From contig CM119380.1 in the NCBI GenBank assembly GCA_051294905.1, positions 3,348,001-3,412,000 on the forward strand: a DNA stretch of 64,000 bases, read 5' to 3'. Position 1 is the stretch's first letter; every line of letters starts with the position of its first letter. The translations under genes were made by a program, and so were the position numbers. The notes below the pieces were generated by a model. It did not search any database, was not told the origin of the DNA, and was given only the letters and a program-made list of their open reading frames with translations. This document shows positions 29,046 to 62,300 of the stretch, one piece after another. This DNA comes from Botryllus schlosseri. Lineage: Eukaryota.

Positions 29046-29742
29046 GTGCACGCGTTCGGCACTTTACGAATATCAGCGGACTGACCGCGAGGACGAGTTA
29101 GATCATTGTGCGCATTTGGCACGTAACGAATATCGGCGGATTGACCGCGAGAACGAGAAGGTATATCATTGTGCGCATTTGGCACGTGACGAATATCGGC
29201 GGGTTGACCGCGAGAACGAGAAGGTATATCATTGTGCGCATTTGGCACGTAACGAATATCGGCGGATTGACCGCGAGAACGAGAAGGTATGTGCGCATTT
29301 GGCACGTGACGAATATCGGCGGGTTGACCGCGAGAACGAGAAGGTATATCATTGTGCGCATTTGGCACGTAACGAATATCGGCGGATTGACCGCGAGAAC
29401 GAGAAGGTATATCATTGTGCGCACTTGGCACGTTACGGATATCGGCAGATTGACCGCGAGAACGAGAAGTTAGATCATTGTGCGCATTTGGCGCGTTACG
29501 GATATCGGCGGATTGGCCGCGAGAACGAGAAGTTGTATCATTAGATCTAAGGCCACTCTGGCACTGCGGAGTGCTTTGAGAACACGAGGGAATGACCGGC
29601 CTCGAACCGGCAGTGAGACTATGGGAATGGATGACGACGAAGTTCCAGCTCGGCTTTGCGGCCTGCAGCTGACCTCGTTAAGAATGAGGCAGAATAACTA
29701 CTCGACGATTCCTTTGAAGTTGTTGGCTTAATGCAGTCATAT

Positions 29743-29841
29743 CAGGGTTGGGTTAGGGGGAATATTAGGGTTGGGTTAGGGGATATTAGTGTTAGGTTAG
29801 GGGCAATATTTGGGTTGGCGGAGGGGGATATTAGGGTTAGG
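29743..29841 (+). repeat. G-rich telomere-like ~21-bp repeats (TTAGGGTTGGGTTAGGGGGATA)
   Basis: Multiple TTAGGG/TTGGG tracts read directly. Confidence 0.85.
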
Positions 29842-30060
29842 GTGTACTTTGCGGCCAAGATACTCGTGTAGGTACCCTCGCATAATTGGGCATGATACCA
29901 AGTGTACTTTGCGGCCAAGATACTCATGTAGGTACTCTCGCACAATAGGGCATGATACCAAGTGTACTTTGCGGCCAAGATACTCGTGTAGGTACCCTCA
30001 CATAATTGGGCATCACGTTTGGTGTATCACGTTTATTTGTGAAAGAACGAAACAAGGAAA
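29840..30060 (-). repeat. Left inverted arm of Merlin element: ~3 copies of 60-bp unit plus unique inner arm
   Basis: Reverse complement of the 31300-32600 arm, including TTTCCTTGTTTCGTTCTTTCACAAATAAACG. Confidence 0.92.
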
Positions 30061-30095
30061 ATTGAACGAAATTGCAGGAATGGTTAATCGTCATT

Positions 30096-31254
30096 TTAAA
30101 ATTGATACTCTGGATGAGTCGCAATCGCACGAATGATATCGGGGAAGTAATGTGCCCTGTCTCTAGTCATTCGCCACATCCACTCCTCAATATATGAGGG
30201 CACAAAACTTCTTACCGAACCATTCATGCGATTGAATTTTCTTTTGCAATCCCGCCATTGACTTTCAATATTATTCGTATGCACGCCATCGGGTGCCACG
30301 TATAAATCCTTATGACACACCGATTTGTGTGTGTAATTCAGGCCCATTCCTGTTAACGAAATACAAATACTTTCATAAAAGTGACTGTTATCGTTGAAAT
30401 ATACATTTTTACCGTTTATGCCACGATATGCAGCCCATTGATCGGACCAAATTTCAGTCCCTGGAGCCATGTGTTGACGAATAATCGGCAAAAGTGTAGC
30501 GGCGTCGCGACGATCGACGAATCGCATGAAGCATTGACTGCATAAAACATTTAATATTCTTCAAGTTTTGCTAACTTGGGTGTTATTTTCTGTATACAAA
30601 CTTCGTTGTGAGATCCACGCCTCCAAATATCCACTGTTGTGGGACGGGTCTTGCCTGGGCATTTTCCCCACGGCCGTGCTTTGCTATGACAGACTCGTCA
30701 ATAGCCACAACGTGTCCTGGACTACCAACGACGCCGGAGCCTCTCAGTACCTCACTCGAGCAGACCTTGAATATATCAGAGTAATCATAGTGCAATGCTA
30801 TACAATTAAACTTGGAAATTACCTCCCTGAAAAATTGACACCAGTCAATGCAGGTCCGATTACTGATCTTTAATTCGTGTATGATCGCGACCTGCAAATG
30901 GTCCTGTGACCAAAAGTAGAGGAGGTACAGTAGTTGCAATGGCGTCAGATTGCTTTTGTAAAAAAAAGAACCAAGACGTATGCTCCAAAAATTCTTGCAT
31001 TTCTGTGAATGAAAAATGTCACGAAACATTAGTTTCTGGCTCCAAAAAAAAATATGACCTCCTACCGGACAACGCCAGGCGGTCCGATCTTTAACGTTCC
31101 TGAATTTTTCAGCGCATGGCACGCTGCATCGTGGGCAATTCTGTTGCCTTGCAAGTAGTCCATGCTGCCTGAAAAACTGAATGGCTGCAGTGTTGCTTGA
31201 CAGCGCGCCCATTCCAATGAGCTCTGGTATGCCTACACCAACTAAACTCGACAT
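30096..31254 (-). CDS. Merlin (IS1595/ISXO2-like) DDE transposase, apparently intact, 5 exons (31254-31066, 31002-30823, 30765-30602, 30537-30413, 30349-30096), 303 aa
   Basis: Spliced length 912 nt with no stops; four 57-64 bp GT-AG introns; WRCPKC..SIR.GSFF, DWCQFFREVC, catalytic VAIDES / IWSDQW / NNIES. Confidence 0.93.
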
Positions 31255-31299
31255 GCTTAGGCTATTGATAAATGTGGGCTATGAAATGAAATGATATAT

Positions 31300-32600
31300 T
31301 ATTTTCCTTGTTTCGTTCTTTCACAAATAAACGCGATACACCCAACGTGATGCCCAATTATGCGAGGCTACCTACACGAGTATCTTGGCCGCCAAGTACA
31401 CTTGGTATCATGCCCAATTATGCGAGACTACCTACACGAGTATCTTGGTCGCAAAGTACACTTGGTATCATGCCCTGCCCAATTATGCGAGAGTACCTGC
31501 ACGAGTATCTTGGCCGCCAAGTACACTTGGTATCATGCCCAATTATGCGAGAGTACCTACACGAGTATCTTGGCCGCGAAGTACACTTGGTATCATGCCC
31601 AATTATGCGAGACTACCTACACGAGTATCTTGGCCGCAAAGTACACTTGGTATCATGCCCAATTATGCGAGACTACCTACACGAGTATCCTGGCCGCAAA
31701 GTACACTTGGTATCATGCCCAATTATGCGAGACTACCTACACGAGTATCTTGGCCGCAAAGTGCACTTGGTATCATGCCCAATTATGCGAGGGTACCTAC
31801 ACGAGTATCTTGGCCGCAAAGTACACTTGGTATCATGCCCAATTATGCGAGGGTACCTACACGAGTATCTTGGCCGCAAAGTACACTTGGTATCATGCCC
31901 AATTATGCGAGACTACCTACACGAGTATCTTGGCCGCAAAGTACACTTGGTATCATGCCCAATTATGCGAGACTACCTACACGAGTATCTTGGCCGCAAA
32001 GTACACTTGGTATCATGCCCAATTATGCGAGACTACCTACACGAGTATCTTGGCCGCAAAGTACACTTGGTATCATGCCAAATTATGCGAGACTACCTAC
32101 ACGAGTATCTTGGCCGCAAAGTACACTTGGTATCATGCCCAATTATGCGAGACTACCTACACGAGTATCTTGGCCGCAAAGTACACTTGGTATCATGCCC
32201 AATTATGCGAGAGTACCTACACGAGTATCTTGGCCGCAAAGTACACTTGGTATCATGCCCAATTATGCGAGAGTACCTACACGAGTATCTTGGCCGCAAA
32301 GTACACTTGGTATCATGCCCAATTATGCGAGGGTACCTACACGAGTATCTTGGCCGCAAAGTACACTTGGTATCATGCCCAATTATGCGAGGGTACCTAC
32401 ACGAGTATCTTGGCCGCAAAGTACACTTGGTATCATGCCCAATTATGCGAGGGTACCTACACGAGTATCTTGGCCGCAAAGTACACTTGGTATCATATCC
32501 TGTTATGCGAGTGTCTCTGTATGAGTATCTTGGCCGCAAAGTACACTTGGTATCATATTCTATTATGCGAGTGTCTTCACATGAGTATCTTGACCGCCTA
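31300..32600 (+). repeat. Right inverted arm of Merlin element expanded into a ~21-copy 60-bp satellite
   Basis: Unit ACGAGTATCTTGGCCGCAAAGTACACTTGGTATCATGCCCAATTATGCGAG(ACT/AGT/GGT)ACCTAC, in register across consecutive 60-nt lines. Confidence 0.97.
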
Positions 32601-33010
32601 GCTGGAGTGCCCGATGTCCAGTTCTTTTCAGGGTCTAGGGGAAGAGGAGCCCAGATAAACGTGCGACGAGAATCGAATCGGATCCGCCAAATTAGTGGGC
32701 GCTTATCGTTACCACTACGTTATCTCCCCCGCACCTATTATCACACCTTATTATGTGAGTGTCTGTACAGTACATGAGTGTAATGGGCGCAAAGTGCGTT
32801 GTATTTTTTAAATTTTCGATAAAAATGCGATACACAATACATAATGTGGTGAAGAGATCGTGTGGTGAAGAGATCGAAGTAAGTCGCTTCCTTGCCCTTT
32901 TCCTTCGTTTTCTTGTACAATTTCTTCATCTGGCATGCGAGCGAGCGATGTAAAATGTAATCTTGCTCATTACCGGCATGTGTATCTGTGAATTCAAGAT
33001 GAGTTGTTTA

Positions 33011-35198
33011 CATAGGCGCTGAACTCTGATTTTCCCTAGGTATGCGAGATCGATGACGTCACAAAGGGATGACGTCATAGTGCGCCAGAATTGGCAAATT
33101 AGCCGACTCGCAAGCGTTCAATATCACCTGGCACTTGTATATGGTGACAAAATTACGATATGATTAGGCAGGCCGCGTAGCCAGCCGGCCGCTTGCTGAA
33201 TTGATTGAATCCATTTCAAATTTACCAAGGTGGCATCAGTTTATTATGGTCAAGAACATGCACCAATGCCGATGATAATTCATCGATCGGATCAGCATCC
33301 TTGTGTAATATTTTTGGTTTGTAATATTTTATTTCTGCAATTTTCCACGGAAATGAAAATGCAACATGAAATAAATACACTCGCGACTTCGGTCACCTTG
33401 CTAACATGCATAACATATAAGCAGAACAATACCCGCCATTTACGGTGACGGGGAAACGAAAAAAATTTTTAACGATAAATAAATGCGAAAAAATCACAAA
33501 ATGAAAATGCGATAATAATCTAAGGGCCAGAGAAGACATGGCCAGTTCGCCCAGGGACAGGGGACACCAACACAGACAAAGGCCTCCACCAAAAACACAC
33601 GATATATGAGGTGGAGGCCGACATACAACACAAAAATACAGAGGCGAACTGGCGAGGTCCGACTACAGGCAGTATCATAATAGTTGTGGTGGTGGAAATC
33701 CAAAAAATAAAATTATCGTCATGAGGTTGGGGAACTCCTCCCCTTAGCATTTAGTACCACTCTGAAACTAAAATCGAAAACTAAAACTATCAACACAACT
33801 ATCGACACATCACGCTACCATAAGATTACCAACGCGTGCGACTGTGTAGTCAATTAGCGAGCTCGCAATCTCCGCAACATATTCGCCAACACACGCGCCG
33901 ACAATCGGGAGATTTCAATCACTCCGCCTCGAGAACAAATGAATACGCATCTTCGGCGACGGCTAATAAGGTTGCAGGTATTATTTCACCAAATAGAAAG
34001 TCTGTTCTGGACTCTATTCATTAGTGACTTTGATTTCATAGGAGTTAGAAGTTTCAATATCATGAGCCTGCAAGACATTTTCTGACCGTTCTGTTTTAGT
34101 ATTAGCGTTAGTCAAAATCAATTACGCCGCTGTCTGTTCACGGTCAGTATGTATTTCAATCAATTCCGTCCATGTTCATTGTTCAATGTCTGAGCCAGTC
34201 TGACATCACAATCACAGAAGAAGCGATAGTTCCGGCCGGCGCATAAGATATCATGTTCCTTCACAGCAGGAGATGACAATCGCAACATTTCGCGCATATA
34301 GAATTTAACATCTTTAGTATCAAGTTCTCGGTCTTGTTGCCTCGCGTTGCGTCTTCTGACCACTCGCGTTTGATCAAATGTTCAGGCGCATAGCCGAGTT
34401 GTTATGGAGTGTGTTCTATAATGGAATCCGCATCGATTTCAGGTGGTTCAAACCTTTCTCAACTTTTATAACTCAAGCCTTGACTCACATCTTCTGATGG
34501 TTATTGGTTATGTTCAAGTATTAGCGGAAATCAAGTACGCATGTACGCACAAGTCACACATTTTTGCGGACATTCGATGTCAGTAAGTTTCGTGATATCA
34601 ATCTTTAATCACACCCGATAGATAGGAGCCAACGCATGCTAGGCCGGAGACGCGATAGTTAGGCCGGCAATGATATATTTCGAACCACGCAGACGCAATT
34701 ATGTAGGCCAACGATGTTATCGTGCGCAGGCCAGTGATGGTATAGTGCGCACCGAGCCTATTGCCGATGCCATTCATCAAGCCAGCGCAACTAGACCTGA
34801 CGGAGACGGGATAAATCAGGCCTGCGACGATTGCGCGCGGTAATCAATGACCTAATTCCGCAATCATCTCAGCGTCGAGATCGCGTTGCGTTACATTGTG
34901 CACAAACGATTCTCGCAAATTGGAAACGCGCTTCCGGCTAATTGGCCGTGGCCCCGCGCAACACTGATAAATACGGACAACTTAATTGTAACTGAAGGAC
35001 GGAGTTTCGTTAAGCGCCTGAACGTATTGCTGTCGGATTACTTACGTGTTCAGCAGCACTACGAAACGCTTATTTCTAAATCGATCAATTCACCACCCAG
35101 TCAGTAACGGACTAAACCGAATTCTGGGTATGCCGCATACCCAAAAAAATTCCTAGGTATGCGCGGCATACCTAGCATACCTGAGTTCAGCGCCTATG
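33011..35198. mobile_element. hAT-type non-autonomous element
   Basis: TIR CATAGGCGCTGAACTC / GAGTTCAGCGCCTATG; perfect TSD GTTGTTTA. Confidence 0.93.
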
Positions 35199-35479
35199 GT
35201 TGTTTATAAGAGGCAATAATATGATATAATATGGAACCCCGACTTGATTTATAGGGCTTTGTGATTATATTGAAAGATGTCGCGGGCCGCGGGTTGAGAA
35301 CCCCTGATTTATAGGGTTTTGTGGGGAGCATAGTCGGTAATTACGTGAAGCACTATGAATTCCGGCACGTTGATGTGCAACACTGATAGGTGATGGTCAT
35401 GGGGATCACTTTCTCGAGGTGGCCGGATTCTACACTTGACCCTATCGATGTCAGTCAGTTCTCGTATTTTTTTAACGTA

Positions 35480-51395: not shown

Positions 51396-52357
51396 CAGTG
51401 TTGGGATGACTCGAGTCATGACTTGACTCGAGTCAGACTCGAGTCACCTTTTTCGTATGACTTGACTTGACTCGAGTCACTTTGCTAAAATGACTTGACT
51501 TGACTTGACTCGTCGATTCAGAAATGTGGATTGACTCGTGACTCGGAGCAAAATTCACAAGTCAATTTCAAGTCATCAAGTAATCGGTGTTGATAAAAAT
51601 GACTGTATCTTGCATATCTTCGGATTGTTCGCGAAACGCTGGTGTAACCCGTGAGAGCGACCAATCATTCAATGATCGTGCGTTTTACTGAGCCTCCATT
51701 GTTATCTCACAAATAAATTGACCAAGAACGAAGTTATCGAAGCTTTCAGCTTACGTTGTCGTGAACTAGTATAGTGAAGTAATTTAATAGCAAAATGTCT
51801 ATTTTTGTTCTCTGTTCTTACCTTAACCAAGCGTCTTGTTTTATTAATTGAATTCGAATATAGGTTATATAGTCCTCAGTCATTGGAGCAGGCTTGAATT
51901 GTATCATATCAATTTTTAAATGGGTATTGTATTGCATCTTATCAATTCGTTTCTATATATTCTCTATTTCGGCTGGTAACTATAAACTGAGGCTATGCAA
52001 TTAGCAGTTTTACGTATATGTGAGCGATACAATGCCTTCTTGCGTGTATATTCAACCCTATATTCGTTCATCTGTTCAAAATCGATGACGACGCAATCGG
52101 TATTTCAGACAGCTAGCAAAATGCAATGACGTAATCATACCTCATACTTCGAAAAGGCAGTTTGACTTGAATTGTGACTTGACTCGTGACTTGACTTGAC
52201 TTGACTCGACTTGACTCGAGTCACCTCCAAAAATCGAGTGACTTGACTTGACTCGAGTCACCTTCGAAAATCGATTGACTTGACTTGACTCGAGTCAAAA
52301 TGTGCAATGACTCGAAATGACTCGTGACTCGAAGGTAGTGACTTGATCCCAACACTG
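51396..52357. mobile_element. hAT MITE with GACTT/GACTCGAGTC repeats
   Basis: TIR CAGTGTTGGGAT / ATCCCAACACTG; perfect TSD CTGGAGAC. Confidence 0.94.
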
Positions 52358-59589: not shown

Positions 59590-60190
59590 CGGGTGGCCGT
59601 GGTGCCAACGCTCAAGCAAGACCGATTCCACAGCAATGGATTTTTGGAGGCGTGGACCTTACGATAAAGTTTGTATACATAAAATAGAAATCCAACGTCA
59701 GCAAAACTTGAAGTATATAATGTTTTATGCAGCCAATGCTTTATGCGATTCGTCGATCGCCGGGACGCAAGTACCTTGCTGCCACTCATTCGACGATATA
59801 TTGCTCCGGGCACCGAAATTTGGTCGGATGAATGGGAAGCGTATCGGGGCAAAACCGGTAAATGAAGTCTTATAAAGCGATAATGGTGAATAAAGCGATA
59901 ATGGTGAATGTTATCAAAACATTTACGTTTGCTTATCAGGAATGGGCAACGGCTACACGCATAAAACAGTCTGCCACAAACGCCTGTTTAAGACTCCTCA
60001 AGGTGTTCACACCAACAATATTGAGAGTCCTTGGCAAGACTGCAAACGGAAGTTTAAGCGAATGAATGGTACGATACGGGGTTTTGTACCGTCATATATC
60101 GATGAATAGATGTGGCGTCGGACCAGAGAAAAAAACATTACTTCTCGGACATTGTTAATGAATTTGCCAGACAATACCTAGTGGAAAATG
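59590..60190 (+). pseudogene. Decayed paralogue of the Merlin transposase (3' three exons)
   Basis: GRGANAQARPIPQQWIFGGVDLT|QCFMRFVDRRDASTLLP..WSDEW|HTNNIES; same intron positions as 30096-31254; TAG in place of W in DE*MW. Confidence 0.92.
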
Positions 60191-60431
60191 AGCACGTAAA
60201 CTGGCATTTCGCTTTAATTTCTTGAAATTTGACTGCTTAGAATTATCTCGTTGTCGAAGTCTGCCTGCAATTTCGTGATTTCGTTTTTCTTTTCAACATC
60301 TCGTTTCGTAGTAATTCGTTAATAAACGTGCTGCCATTGGCTATAGTTCGAGTCTTATCTACATTTATGTTTTGACCGGAAGTTGGAGTCAGGGCCATTC
60401 CATAATATGCGAGTGTCTGCACATATGTATT

Positions 60432-61964
60432 CCCAGCTAGGTATCCAGGTGGAATTTAAGTGGTTAGGTGGGATGGATAATCGGAATTGGTTAGTAACAT
60501 GTAACCCAAATCGAAACCAAGCGGGATTTCCATCCATGAAGATGCGTGGTTATACCATACCAATCCCAGGTAGGTTGCAACAAGTCTCTTCTCATTGTAT
60601 CTATCAATGAACTCCTGGGAGTTTTGCTTGATGAGTTTTTGATATCAAATCATGAGAAAACATGATGAAACATGAGAAATCCACTTATAGAGGAGATCAG
60701 ATTTCCCATATATCACCCACACAGGAACCAACATTATTTTCAATCAATGTTATTTGGTTTATTTCATTGAATAATGAAGGTGGTCTCGTACGTAGTAAGG
60801 TTTTCTAGCTATTATGCGATCCCTGTTAGTTGCTCGAACATCAAACATTAAAACCCATACATTGCTTTACTTCGTCAATGTGATTTGAACTATTTAAAAT
60901 TGACCGTTTGTCACACTGAAGTGAACTTAAATTTCCGCTGCTAGAGTACTGAATTCCTCAAAGCGTGCCTTATAGTGTTCTTGCGTAGATCCCATTACCT
61001 TTATCCCTTATCTGTATCTATTATTTTTAACTCAGGATTAATTTTACTCGTAAAATTTCTGTGATCAAATAATTGGAACTTGTGATTTTCGTCAATGAAC
61101 GCGGTTCGATTTTTCATATAGCTCCCACATGCGACCGAGTAGTTTCCGATGCCTCTTTTACATTTTCCTACAGCAAGGTTTGTTCATCTATATAGTGAAG
61201 TCATAATATCATCGGTATCCGATTCATTCATTTGCGATGATGGTCGCTGGGACACTTCCTAATTGAATTCCATCTCCATATGAATTGAATTCGGGTACTG
61301 GTGACGATGAGCGCCTAAGAATCGGGCGGCCTCGGTTCGACTCCCGTCGGAGGTTTGTCTGGGCTCCTCTTCTCCCGACATGAGACCCGAGAATGACTCG
61401 AAAGAATGCACTCGCAAGTTATGAAAATCGCTAGCACGGGCCGTGGCCTCGAGAATGATCAACATGTCAGTCTAAAAGACGGCAACTGCGCGTCGGTCGG
61501 CATCCTCCTATCTGTTCATTACATCGCATTGTCTTGTTCAGCTGAAACTACAACTCAACGATTGCACTGAAACAGTGATGACGGCCTCACCCATCGTAAA
61601 GGTTATTATATACTCAGATTGCCGTGTATATTGATTTGAGTGAGTGTTGGTAGCAGGTATGTACTGTACAGTATACAATGTTGAAGTTAACTAACGTGCA
61701 GGGTTTACCTAACATCGCCTTAGCACATGTCTACGTCGAATTCTCGGCCCACTTACACTGTCACTGCTATTGCCACTGCTACGAGGACCGGGGTCGTAAT
61801 ATTGTCTTCGCTACCAGCTCAGTGGGTTAGCTACATCGTCCCGCATAAAATACCTCTGTAAAATGGGGCCAAAAAGGCACGGGCCCGATTGGTTTCCCGA
61901 CCTGGTTACCACAATTCATCTCACCTTGATACCTTGTGGTACCCAAGTAGGCGTGCTACCTGGG
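60432..61964. mobile_element. CMC/EnSpm-type insertion into the first satellite unit of the second Merlin
   Basis: Ends CCCAGCTAG / CTACCTGGG; TT TSD; removal restores the unit ..CACATATGTA-TT-GTGGCTG.. Confidence 0.75.
61290..61400 (+). other. Possible tRNA-derived SINE fragment (B-box GGTTCGACTCC); inverted homologue at ~32630-32690
   Basis: CGGTTCGACTCCCGTCG..GTTTGTCTGGGCTCCTCTT matches the reverse complement of 32638-32685; no clear A-box. Confidence 0.4.
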
Positions 61965-62300
61965 TTGTGGCTGAAAAGTACGATTGATATCATGCCCGAC
62001 TATGCGAGTGTCTGCACATACGTATTGTGGCTGGAAACTACACTTGGTATCATACTCGACGATGCGAGAGTATTTATATCAGTATCTTGGCCGCAAAGTA
62101 CATTATACACCATACCCGACTATGCGAGTGTCTGCACATAAGTATTGTGGCTGGAAAGCACACTAGGTATTATACTCGACGATGCGAGAGTATCTACATT
62201 AGTATCTTGGCCGCAAAGTACATTAGATACCATACCCGACTATGCAGGTGTCTTCACATAAGTACTGTGGCTGGAAAGTACACTTGGTATCATACATGGC
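61965..62300 (+). repeat. Diverged Merlin 60-bp repeats arranged as a 120-bp dimer
   Basis: Alternating units CCGACTATGCGAGTGTCTGCACATA..GTGGCTGGAAA and CTCGACGATGCGAGAG..TCTTGGCCGCAAAGTAC. Confidence 0.88.

What the first reader, a model, noticed from the sequence alone, without database searches (positions are those of the whole stretch)
30096..31254. Apparently intact, four-intron Merlin/IS1595-like transposase hidden from the ORF track
Seen: removing four 57-64 bp GT-AG introns gives a 912-nt stop-free CDS (303 aa) with Zn-ribbon CxxC...CxxC and all three catalytic residues (IDES, SDQW, NIES). It is the only transposase in the window without lesions. Three introns are multiples of 3, and two of them are read through by the ORF track. 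Inference: an active or very recently active autonomous element, possibly the mobiliser of 8-bp-TSD MITEs nearby.
Basis: partly seen in the sequence, partly recalled or inferred. Interest (0 to 1): 0.75.

Follow-up and report, generated by a model that had tools for sequence, protein, structure and literature searches.

The report
Intact Merlin transposase in a crippled copy
The copy that carries it has lost one end and its upstream region, so it is an ordinary stranded member of a Merlin family whose other copies jumped very recently.

Summary
On the minus strand, five exons (31254-31066, 31002-30823, 30765-30602, 30537-30413, 30349-30096) give 912 nt, or 303 codons plus a stop. They are separated by four AT-rich GT-AG introns of 63, 57, 64 and 63 bp. 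Exons 4 and 5 each pass Pfam's threshold for DDE_Tnp_IS1595. Uninterrupted homologues align across every junction. Splice sites and phases are kept in subfamilies whose silent sites are saturated (dN/dS about 0.06).

This copy is not an autonomous element:
- Its 3' arm stops at 29842, and no 3' terminus lies in the window or near it on the contig.
- Its upstream region is replaced by an inverted duplicate of its own 3' end.
- A 2.2-kb foreign element sits in its 5' arm.
- Its own-lineage changes look neutral (8 replacement, 3 silent).

It is 4-5% diverged from three complete sister copies, all with intact genes, GGGTCAAG termini and 8-bp target duplications. Two sisters are 100% identical at different sites, so the family was active very recently. 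About 98 matching termini exist genome-wide, including short derivatives with perfect duplications. None lies in this window apart from this copy's own end.

Verdict: a new member of a known kind, of low interest. Another first-stage reader noted this same stretch.

The parts
31066..31254 (-). Exon 1 (63 codons, phase 0). It holds the start ATG at 31254-31252, C40-P-R-C43 and C62 of the zinc-ribbon-like motif.
   Evidence: The ATG and the frame are kept in the sister copies and in the 73% subfamily.
31003..31065 (-). Intron 1: 63 bp, GT-AG, 35% GC.
   Evidence: Its length is 66, 68 and 67 bp in other copies, with GT/AG kept. Homologue P0003 runs RCCKCK straight across this junction.
30823..31002 (-). 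Exon 2 (60 codons). It begins K64-C65, which completes the second CxxC, and probably forms a helix-turn-helix-like DNA-binding region.
   Evidence: It aligns to P0001 residues 71-129 and P0003 residues 57-110.
30766..30822 (-). Intron 2: 57 bp, GT-AG, 28% GC.
   Evidence: 59 and 67 bp elsewhere. The last residue of exon 2 and the first of exon 3 align to P0001 residues 129 and 130.
30602..30765 (-). Exon 3 (164 nt; its last 2 nt begin a split codon). It carries the first catalytic D146 in VVAIDES.
   Evidence: 63-65% identity to P0002 and P0004.
30538..30601 (-). Intron 3: 64 bp, GT-AG. It is the only intron that breaks the frame if retained.
30413..30537 (-). Exon 4 (125 nt). It carries the second catalytic D210 in IWSDQW.
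   Evidence: PF12762 at E 1.5e-6, 28.7 bits against a cut-off of 27, profile positions 52-91. NF033547 also hits.
30350..30412 (-). Intron 4: 63 bp, GT-AG, 25% GC.
30096..30349 (-). Exon 5 (254 nt including the TAA stop). It carries the catalytic E248 in HTNNIESQW.
   Evidence: PF12762 at E 1.5e-6, 28.8 bits, profile positions 95-152.
31294..31301 (-). TATA-like box TAATATAT, about 45 nt before the ATG. Homology to all other copies ends just upstream of it.
   Evidence: Read. AATAATATAT is conserved in C8, C14 and the 73% subfamily. That it is a promoter is an inference.
30033..30038 (-). AATAAA polyadenylation-signal-like hexamer, 58 nt after the stop.
   Evidence: Read. Inference only.
30014..30062 (.). 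Native 3' inner unique segment between the gene and the 3' array.
   Evidence: It occurs once, on the 3' side, in each sister copy.
31301..31349 (.). Inverted duplicate of the 3' inner segment. It stands where the sister copies have at least 372 bp of upstream sequence.
   Evidence: (pair I7, 94%).
29842..30013 (.). Stump of the 3' arm: 2.9 units of the 60-bp repeat. It ends abruptly against a telomere-like 23-bp satellite.
31350..32597 (.). 5' arm array: 20.7 units of the 60-bp repeat.
32598..33010 (.). Unique outer part of the 5' arm, up to the nested insertion.
33011..35198 (.). Nested foreign element: 2188 bp, perfect 16-bp TIR CATAGGCGCTGAACTC, and 8-bp TSD GTTGTTTA at 33003-33010 and 35199-35206. 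It is not Merlin, probably hAT-like.
35199..35442 (-). The terminal part of the arm and the only terminus of this copy. The TIR GGGTCAAGTGTAGAATCCGG reads inward from 35442. The flank 35443-35450 is TATCGATG.

Best explanation
This is a genuine five-exon gene for a Merlin-superfamily (IS1595-like) DDE cut-and-paste transposase.

The protein. It has an N-terminal CxxC...CxxC zinc-ribbon-like motif, whose second half is assembled by splicing intron 1. A probable helix-turn-helix region follows, then a catalytic triad D146/D210/E248. By analogy with the family, the protein binds the GGGTCAAG... termini, cuts the element out, and re-inserts it with an 8-bp staggered cut.

This copy. It is a stranded, rearranged copy. 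It keeps one terminus (35442). It has lost its 3' terminus and most of its 3' arm. Its native upstream region has been replaced by an inverted duplicate of its own 3' end. A foreign element has inserted into its 5' arm. It cannot move itself, and its gene has most likely been drifting neutrally.

The family. It was active very recently through complete sister copies on other contigs.

Shown: the gene model, the family assignment, the truncation and the recent movement of the sisters. Inferred: the catalytic mechanism, the promoter and poly(A) signals, and whether this copy is expressed.
For: Gene model:
- 912 nt, a single terminal stop, four AT-rich GT-AG introns.
- PF12762 passes its cut-off on exon 4 and on exon 5 separately. 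NF033547, the IS1595 transposase model, matches the same exons at E about 3e-6 to 5e-6, below its whole-protein cut-off of 75 bits.
- Uninterrupted homologues P0001, P0002 and P0003 align colinearly, with 0-2 residue offsets, across all four junctions. The translated intron sequence has no significant match in them.
- P0003 has RCCKCK where the exon 1/2 splice gives RCPKCK.
- In three sister copies the same model is stop-free, every GT/AG is kept, exons have no indels, and intron lengths vary.
- Splice sites and phases are kept in copies of 65-90% amino-acid identity.
- dN/dS is 0.06 against the 73% subfamily and 0.18 between sister copies.

Family:
- The sister copies on C8, C14 and C6 have termini GGGTCAAGTG... 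and 8-bp TSDs CACTGATT, GGAAATTG and AATCATTG.
- C14 and C6 are 100% identical over 1900 bp of unique core and 420 bp of terminus.
- There are 98 termini genome-wide against 0 for the reversed control.
- Derivatives of 0.7-1.5 kb have perfect 8-bp TSDs.

This copy is crippled:
- It has one terminus only.
- Homology to a full element stops at 29842.
- The upstream region is replaced.
- A foreign element is nested in its arm.
- Polarised changes on its own lineage are 8 replacement to 3 silent, including G138S and D274E at positions invariant in all homologues.
- A neutral copy with 19 substitutions stays stop-free 43% of the time.
Against: - No transcript data were available, so splicing is inferred from comparison only.
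- Whole-protein scores and the zinc-ribbon family assignment are therefore untested.
- Unpolarised, the branch separating the window copy from its sisters has 11 replacement and 8 silent changes. That is marginally fewer replacements than neutral (p 0.04-0.13), so some selection on this lineage cannot be excluded.
- The TATA-like box, the ATG and the AATAAA are all retained, so expression is possible.
- A 3' terminus more than 30 kb away, or with more than one mismatch, cannot be ruled out absolutely.
Confidence: 0.85

Rival explanations
1. One reading: this copy is itself an active or very recently active autonomous Merlin element.
For: The CDS is intact with the DDE triad. One good terminus lies at 35442. 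The family is clearly recent.
Against: - There is no second terminus in the window. On the contig the nearest is about 0.8 Mb to the right, and none is listed to the left of the window.
- The 3' arm is cut at 29842.
- The upstream region is replaced.
- It is 4-5% diverged from all relatives.
- Its own-lineage changes look neutral.
Confidence: 0.04
2. The copy is immobile but still transcribed and spliced. It then supplies working transposase in trans to the roughly 45 elements that share its termini, like a wings-clipped helper.
For: - The frame is open, all splice sites are present, and the conserved TATA-like box and AATAAA are retained.
- The catalytic residues are intact.
- Substrates are abundant.
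Against: - It has lost at least 372 bp of upstream sequence, 70 bp of which is conserved between subfamilies.
- It has derived replacements at invariant positions, G138S near the first D and D274E.
- Three complete intact sister copies are better candidates.
- There are no expression data.
Confidence: 0.2
3. The introns are an artefact of fitting GT-AG pairs to a decayed intronless gene. The real state would be a pseudogene.
For: Three of the four introns are multiples of three and stop-free here, so read-through ORFs exist.
Against: - Intron lengths differ between copies by non-multiples of three, while the exons keep their frame.
- The homologues lack the intron-encoded residues.
- Positions and phases are conserved across subfamilies with saturated silent sites.
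- The introns are 15-25 points lower in GC than the exons.
Confidence: 0.02
4. It is a domesticated, host-recruited transposase gene rather than part of a transposon.
For: An intact frame in a copy that cannot move.
Against: - It lies inside recognisable Merlin arms that end in a terminus.
- It has multiple paralogous insertions with TSDs.
- No selection is detectable on its own lineage.
Confidence: 0.02

Closest known systems
Merlin superfamily of eukaryotic DNA transposons (Feschotte 2004, as summarised in PMC8101967)
   Same: DDE_Tnp_IS1595 catalytic domain with a DDE triad, termini beginning 5'-GG, 8-bp target-site duplications, co-existing divergent families in one genome, and short non-autonomous derivatives.
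   Different: - The inverted arms of the complete sister copies are 1.5-2.5 kb and consist mostly of 60-bp satellite arrays. The reported TIR range is 24-462 bp (PMC8101967).
- The transposase has an N-terminal CxxC...CxxC motif. PMC8101967 says described Merlins lack the Pfam Zn_Tnp_IS1595 domain. Membership of that Pfam family was not shown here either.
Bacterial IS1595 / IS1016 insertion sequences
   Same: The same catalytic domain (PF12762, NF033547), 8-bp duplications, and an N-terminal zinc-binding motif in most IS1595 groups.
   Different: A eukaryotic gene with four spliceosomal-type introns, a TATA-like box and an AATAAA. The elements are 7-10 kb rather than about 1 kb. Each exon match to NF033547 scores far below its 75-bit equivalog cut-off.
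Merlin families with internal tandem repeats in Symbiodinium (Sy.m_F1, Sy.k_F2; PMC8101967)
   Same: Tandem repeats sit inside the element, in one case duplicated in inverted orientation. Those authors proposed such repeats as proto-satellites.
   Different: Here the arrays reach 20-40 units of 60 bp, lie on both arms, and form most of the inverted repeat.
Intronless Merlin-type transposase frames of about 317-339 aa in the same genome
   Same: The same domain, at 30-39% identity to exon 5.
   Different: No introns and a different lineage. Other scan notes place some of them in virus-like elements. I did not test that.

Membership tests
Merlin superfamily | Transposase with the DDE_Tnp_IS1595 (PF12762) domain | tested here: met
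   Exon 4 scores 28.7 bits and exon 5 scores 28.8 bits, each above the 27-bit cut-off. The exon 4-5 read-through ORF scores 52.1 bits.
Merlin superfamily | A conserved D, D, E catalytic triad | tested here: met
   D146 (AIDES), D210 (WSDQW) and E248 (NNIES) align with VDES / TDGW / NNVES of P0003 and IDES / SDEW / NNIE of P0002.
Merlin superfamily | Terminal inverted repeats beginning 5'-GG | tested here: met
   GGGTCAAGTGTAG... is at both ends of the C8, C14 and C6 copies and at window 35442.
Merlin superfamily | 8- or 9-bp target-site duplication | tested here: met
   Perfect 8-bp TSDs flank the three full copies and four short derivatives. This cannot be tested for the window copy, which has one end only.
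Autonomous (self-mobilisable) element | Both termini flank an intact transposase gene | tested here: not met
   Only one terminus is in the window. Homology to a full element ends at 29842. On the contig the nearest partner terminus is about 0.8 Mb to the right, and none is listed to the left of the window.
Autonomous (self-mobilisable) element | The native upstream (promoter) region is retained | tested here: not met
   The sister copies share at least 372 bp upstream of the TATA-like box, and about 70 bp of it is shared with the 73% subfamily. The window copy has an inverted copy of its own 3' end there instead.
Pfam Zn_Tnp_IS1595 (PF12760) zinc ribbon | A match to the family profile | tested here: inconclusive
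Exon 1 and exon 2 on their own, and the read-through ORF, gave no hit at E up to 1. Homologues P0001 and P0003, which have the same motif uninterrupted, gave none either.
Spliced eukaryotic gene | Junctions confirmed by transcripts | not testable with these tools
   No RNA data. The support is comparative only.

The most novel reading that the evidence does not exclude
This Merlin lineage is moving now. Two copies are identical but sit at different sites, and there are about 45 shorter relatives. Its kilobase-long inverted arms are growing 60-bp satellite arrays, so it could serve as a natural system for watching a transposon seed satellites. The stranded window copy may still act as a fixed source of transposase from its retained core promoter.
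Probability: 0.15. Interest if true: 0.45.

Novelty: new member of a known kind. Interest (0 to 1): 0.22.

Why it matters
Practically, this gives a validated exon-intron model for a Merlin transposase that ORF-based annotation splits into two spurious ORFs. It also shows that an intact frame is weak evidence of activity: this copy has lost one end and its upstream region.

The family as a whole is a good candidate for a currently active Merlin in an animal genome. It has identical copies at different sites, many short derivatives, and arms far longer than the range reported for the superfamily. That makes it useful for studying transposition and satellite birth, but these are properties of the sister copies and of a finding that another reader already logged.

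Tried and rejected
- Pfam and NCBIfam scans of exons 1, 2 and 3 alone, and of the 223-aa read-through ORF, gave nothing. These pieces are short or interrupted, so this says little.
- The word-based protein search with the 223-aa ORF found only four relatives. That was enough for junction checks but not for a tree.
The contig of homologue P0002 is a short metagenome piece with a pogo-like transposase beside it, and added nothing.
- Two paper searches found no description of this family or of Merlin intron structure.
- I considered that the in-frame, stop-free introns might serve regulated retention. I rejected this because intron lengths in the sister copies are not multiples of three.
- I considered that C14 and C6 might be a segmental duplication. 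I rejected this because their flanks and 8-bp duplications differ.
- The codon analyses used 301 whole codons, exon by exon, and left out the two split codons.

Full report
**1. The observation**

| Exon | Coordinates | Length (nt) |
|---|---|---|
| 1 | 31254-31066 | 189 |
| 2 | 31002-30823 | 180 |
| 3 | 30765-30602 | 164 |
| 4 | 30537-30413 | 125 |
| 5 | 30349-30096 | 254 |

They add up to 912 nt. Followed exon by exon with the correct phases, they give 304 codons whose only stop is the last.

The four intervening segments are 63, 57, 64 and 63 bp. All begin GT and end AG. They have 25-35% GC against 41-56% for the exons.

The mechanical ORF list splits the gene in two. A 223-aa ORF (30583-31254) reads through introns 1 and 2 and dies in intron 3. 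A 143-aa ORF (30096-30527) reads through intron 4. So three introns are read through, not two.

**2. Are the introns real?**

No transcript data can be reached, so the test is comparative. It has four parts.

*Family scans.* Exon 4 (E 1.5e-6, 28.7 bits) and exon 5 (E 1.5e-6, 28.8 bits) each pass Pfam's 27-bit cut-off for PF12762 DDE_Tnp_IS1595. They match consecutive parts of the profile, positions 52-91 and 95-152. NCBIfam's IS1595 transposase model agrees.

*Homologues.* A word-based search with the 223-aa ORF found four relatives. Aligned exon by exon, they are colinear and contiguous across every junction. For example, exon 2 residue 60 and exon 3 residue 1 fall on P0001 residues 129 and 130. 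Exons 3, 4 and 5 fall on P0002 residues 1-53, 57-95 and 97-170. The translated intron sequence has no significant match in them: the only hit is 8 residues at E 0.16.

The exon 1/2 splice joins ...AWRCP to KCKNFWSIRLGSFF.... P0003 reads ...FRCCKCKRRASIRRGSIF... without interruption. The second CxxC of the zinc-ribbon-like motif (C62, C65) therefore exists only in the spliced product.

*Sister copies.* The genome is a 495-Mb eukaryote, and the window is C10:3348001-3412000. It holds three other full copies at 95-96% identity, on C8, C14 and C6. Projected onto them, the model is stop-free in all three. Every GT and AG is kept, and the exons have no indels. Intron lengths change to 66 or 68, 59, 65 and 63 bp. 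These changes would break the frame if the segments were coding.

*Divergent subfamilies.* In copies with 65-90% amino-acid identity per exon, the same acceptor and donor dinucleotides and the same phases flank each exon. Against the 73% copy at C3:910k, dN/dS is about 0.06 with silent sites saturated. Between C8 and C14 it is 0.18.

I take the gene model as established short of RNA evidence.

**3. What the protein is**

Residues are numbered on the model. The features are:
- C40-x2-C43 and C62-x2-C65.
- A region aligning to the N-terminal halves of the IS1595-like homologues (exon 2).
- D146 in VVAIDES, D210 in IWSDQW and E248 in HTNNIESQW.

The three acidic residues align with the same residues in P0002 and P0003. 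The spacing is 63 residues between the two D and 37 between the second D and E.

PF12760, the Pfam zinc-ribbon family of IS1595, was not detected in the separate exons or in the uninterrupted homologues. I therefore call the motif zinc-ribbon-like and do not file it in that family.

The joined protein was not sent to any search or folding tool. That step is left out.

**4. The element around the gene**

The gene is flanked by inverted arrays of a 60-bp unit. There are 2.9 units at 29842-30013 and 20.7 units at 31350-32597. A 49-bp unique segment lies inside each array.

The sister copies define the complete element:

| Copy | Length (bp) | 8-bp TSD |
|---|---|---|
| C8:83029-90224 | 7196 | CACTGATT |
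| C14:5127645-5138001 | 10357 | GGAAATTG |
| C6:16543664-16551976 | about 8300 | AATCATTG |

Each ends in GGGTCAAGTGTAGAATACGG... on both sides. The inverted arms align over 1.5-2.5 kb. These features meet every defining feature of Merlin listed in PMC8101967: the DDE_Tnp_IS1595 domain, 5'-GG termini and 8-9-bp TSDs. The arms are several times longer than the 24-462 bp range quoted there.

**5. The state of the window copy**

*One terminus only.* The terminus sequence occurs once in the window, at 35413-35442 on the minus strand. BLAST of the complete C8 element against the whole window shows this copy's homology only at 29842-33010, 35196-35263 and 35305-35442. The other matches are short pieces at 51458-52347 and the separate second copy at 59595-62295.

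*A nested foreign element.* Between 33010 and 35199 lies a 2188-bp element. It has a perfect 16-bp TIR, CATAGGCGCTGAACTC, and the TSD GTTGTTTA.

*A truncated 3' arm.* On the other side the 3' arm stops dead at 29842, against a telomere-like 23-bp satellite. A genome-wide pattern search lists no other terminus on C10 to the left of the window. The nearest one is at 4198812, about 0.8 Mb to the right.

*A replaced upstream region.* C8, C14 and C6 share at least 372 bp immediately upstream of the conserved AATAATATAT box. About 70 bp of it is shared with the 73% subfamily. In the window copy, homology ends exactly at that box (31304). What lies upstream is an inverted duplicate of the copy's own 3' inner segment plus array.

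The copy is therefore one-ended, rearranged and invaded. It cannot be cut out by a transposase that needs two termini.

**6. Is its gene still under selection?**

Nineteen coding differences separate the window copy from the state shared by C8 and C14: 11 replacement and 8 silent. Polarised with the 73% subfamily, the window's own lineage has 8 replacement and 3 silent changes. That is the neutral proportion, about 0.72-0.77 replacement.

The changes include G138S, eight residues before the first catalytic D, and D274E. Both are at positions invariant in all homologues seen.

The sister lineages show 5 replacement to 8 silent (p 0.003-0.012 against neutrality). A neutral copy with 19 coding substitutions stays free of stops 43% of the time. 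Intactness alone is therefore weak evidence.

**7. Family activity**

The C14 and C6 copies are 100% identical over 1900 bp of unique core and over 420 bp of terminus. They sit at different sites with different TSDs. That means transposition, and very recent.

Within each of the C8 and C14 elements the two termini are 100% identical, and in C6 they are 99.5% identical. The 23-nt terminus occurs 98 times in the genome (52 forward, 46 reverse). The reversed control occurs 0 times. Most occurrences are pairs 0.7-4 kb apart.

Eight such places were fetched. Four are elements of 713-1496 bp with perfect 8-bp TSDs. One has an offset TSD. Three showed only one end.

None of those dependants is in this window, and the better candidate sources are the complete sister copies.

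**8. Context and comparison**

The genome holds at least 81 matches to exon 5. Many lie in uninterrupted frames of 317-339 aa at 30-39% identity. This is a different, intronless Merlin lineage. Other notes of this scan place Merlin-type transposases in virus-like elements. I did not test those.

The second Merlin copy in the window (59595-60152) keeps only part of exon 3 plus exons 4-5, and has a TAG in exon 5.

PMC8101967 already reports tandem repeats inside Merlin families and proposes them as proto-satellites. Another first-stage reader noted this very stretch for its satellite arms.

**9. Verdict**

This is a new member of a known kind: an ordinary, intact-looking but stranded copy of a recently active Merlin family. 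Interest is low for this finding as stated. There is moderate interest in the family's long satellite-bearing arms and its recent activity.

Noticed in passing
window 33011-35198: A 2188-bp non-autonomous element with a perfect 16-bp TIR (CATAGGCGCTGAACTC) and 8-bp TSD GTTGTTTA. It is nested in the Merlin 5' arm. It is probably hAT-like, and no long ORF lies inside it.
   Followed up: partly
window 29739-29843 and 29051-29542: The truncated Merlin arm abuts (CCCTAA)2 followed by a degenerate 23-bp telomere-like satellite. A 63-bp satellite of 8 units lies further on. The break next to telomere-like repeats is unexplained.
   Followed up: no
window 31301-31349 versus 30014-30062: The copy's 5' side is an inverted duplicate of its own 3' inner segment plus array, which suggests a foldback-type rearrangement. 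Another note reports a hAT element in the same window that is also built from two copies of its 3' end.
   Followed up: partly
G000 C14:5127645-5138001 and C6:16543664-16551976 (L026, L027): Two complete Merlin copies are 100% identical in core and termini but differ by about 2 kb in array length. The 60-bp arrays therefore change length faster than point mutations accumulate.
   Followed up: partly
G000 C14:8329842-8335738 (L029): A 5.9-kb internally deleted derivative. Its terminal 181 bp are 100% identical to those of the C8 copy, and it keeps only the 5' part of the gene, as expected from abortive gap repair after recent excision.
   Followed up: partly
G000 C8:85338-87004 (L025:2339-4005): The C8 copy carries about 1.7 kb of extra sequence between its 5' array and the shared upstream region. 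A 159-bp piece of it recurs at window 52191-52347 and in the C2 derivative (L032).
   Followed up: no
genome-wide: There are dozens of uninterrupted 317-339-aa Merlin-type frames at 30-39% identity to exon 5. This is a separate intronless lineage in the same genome.
   Followed up: no
window 59595-60152: The second Merlin copy in the window, from the 71% subfamily, retains only part of exon 3 plus exons 4-5 and has a TAG stop in exon 5.
   Followed up: partly
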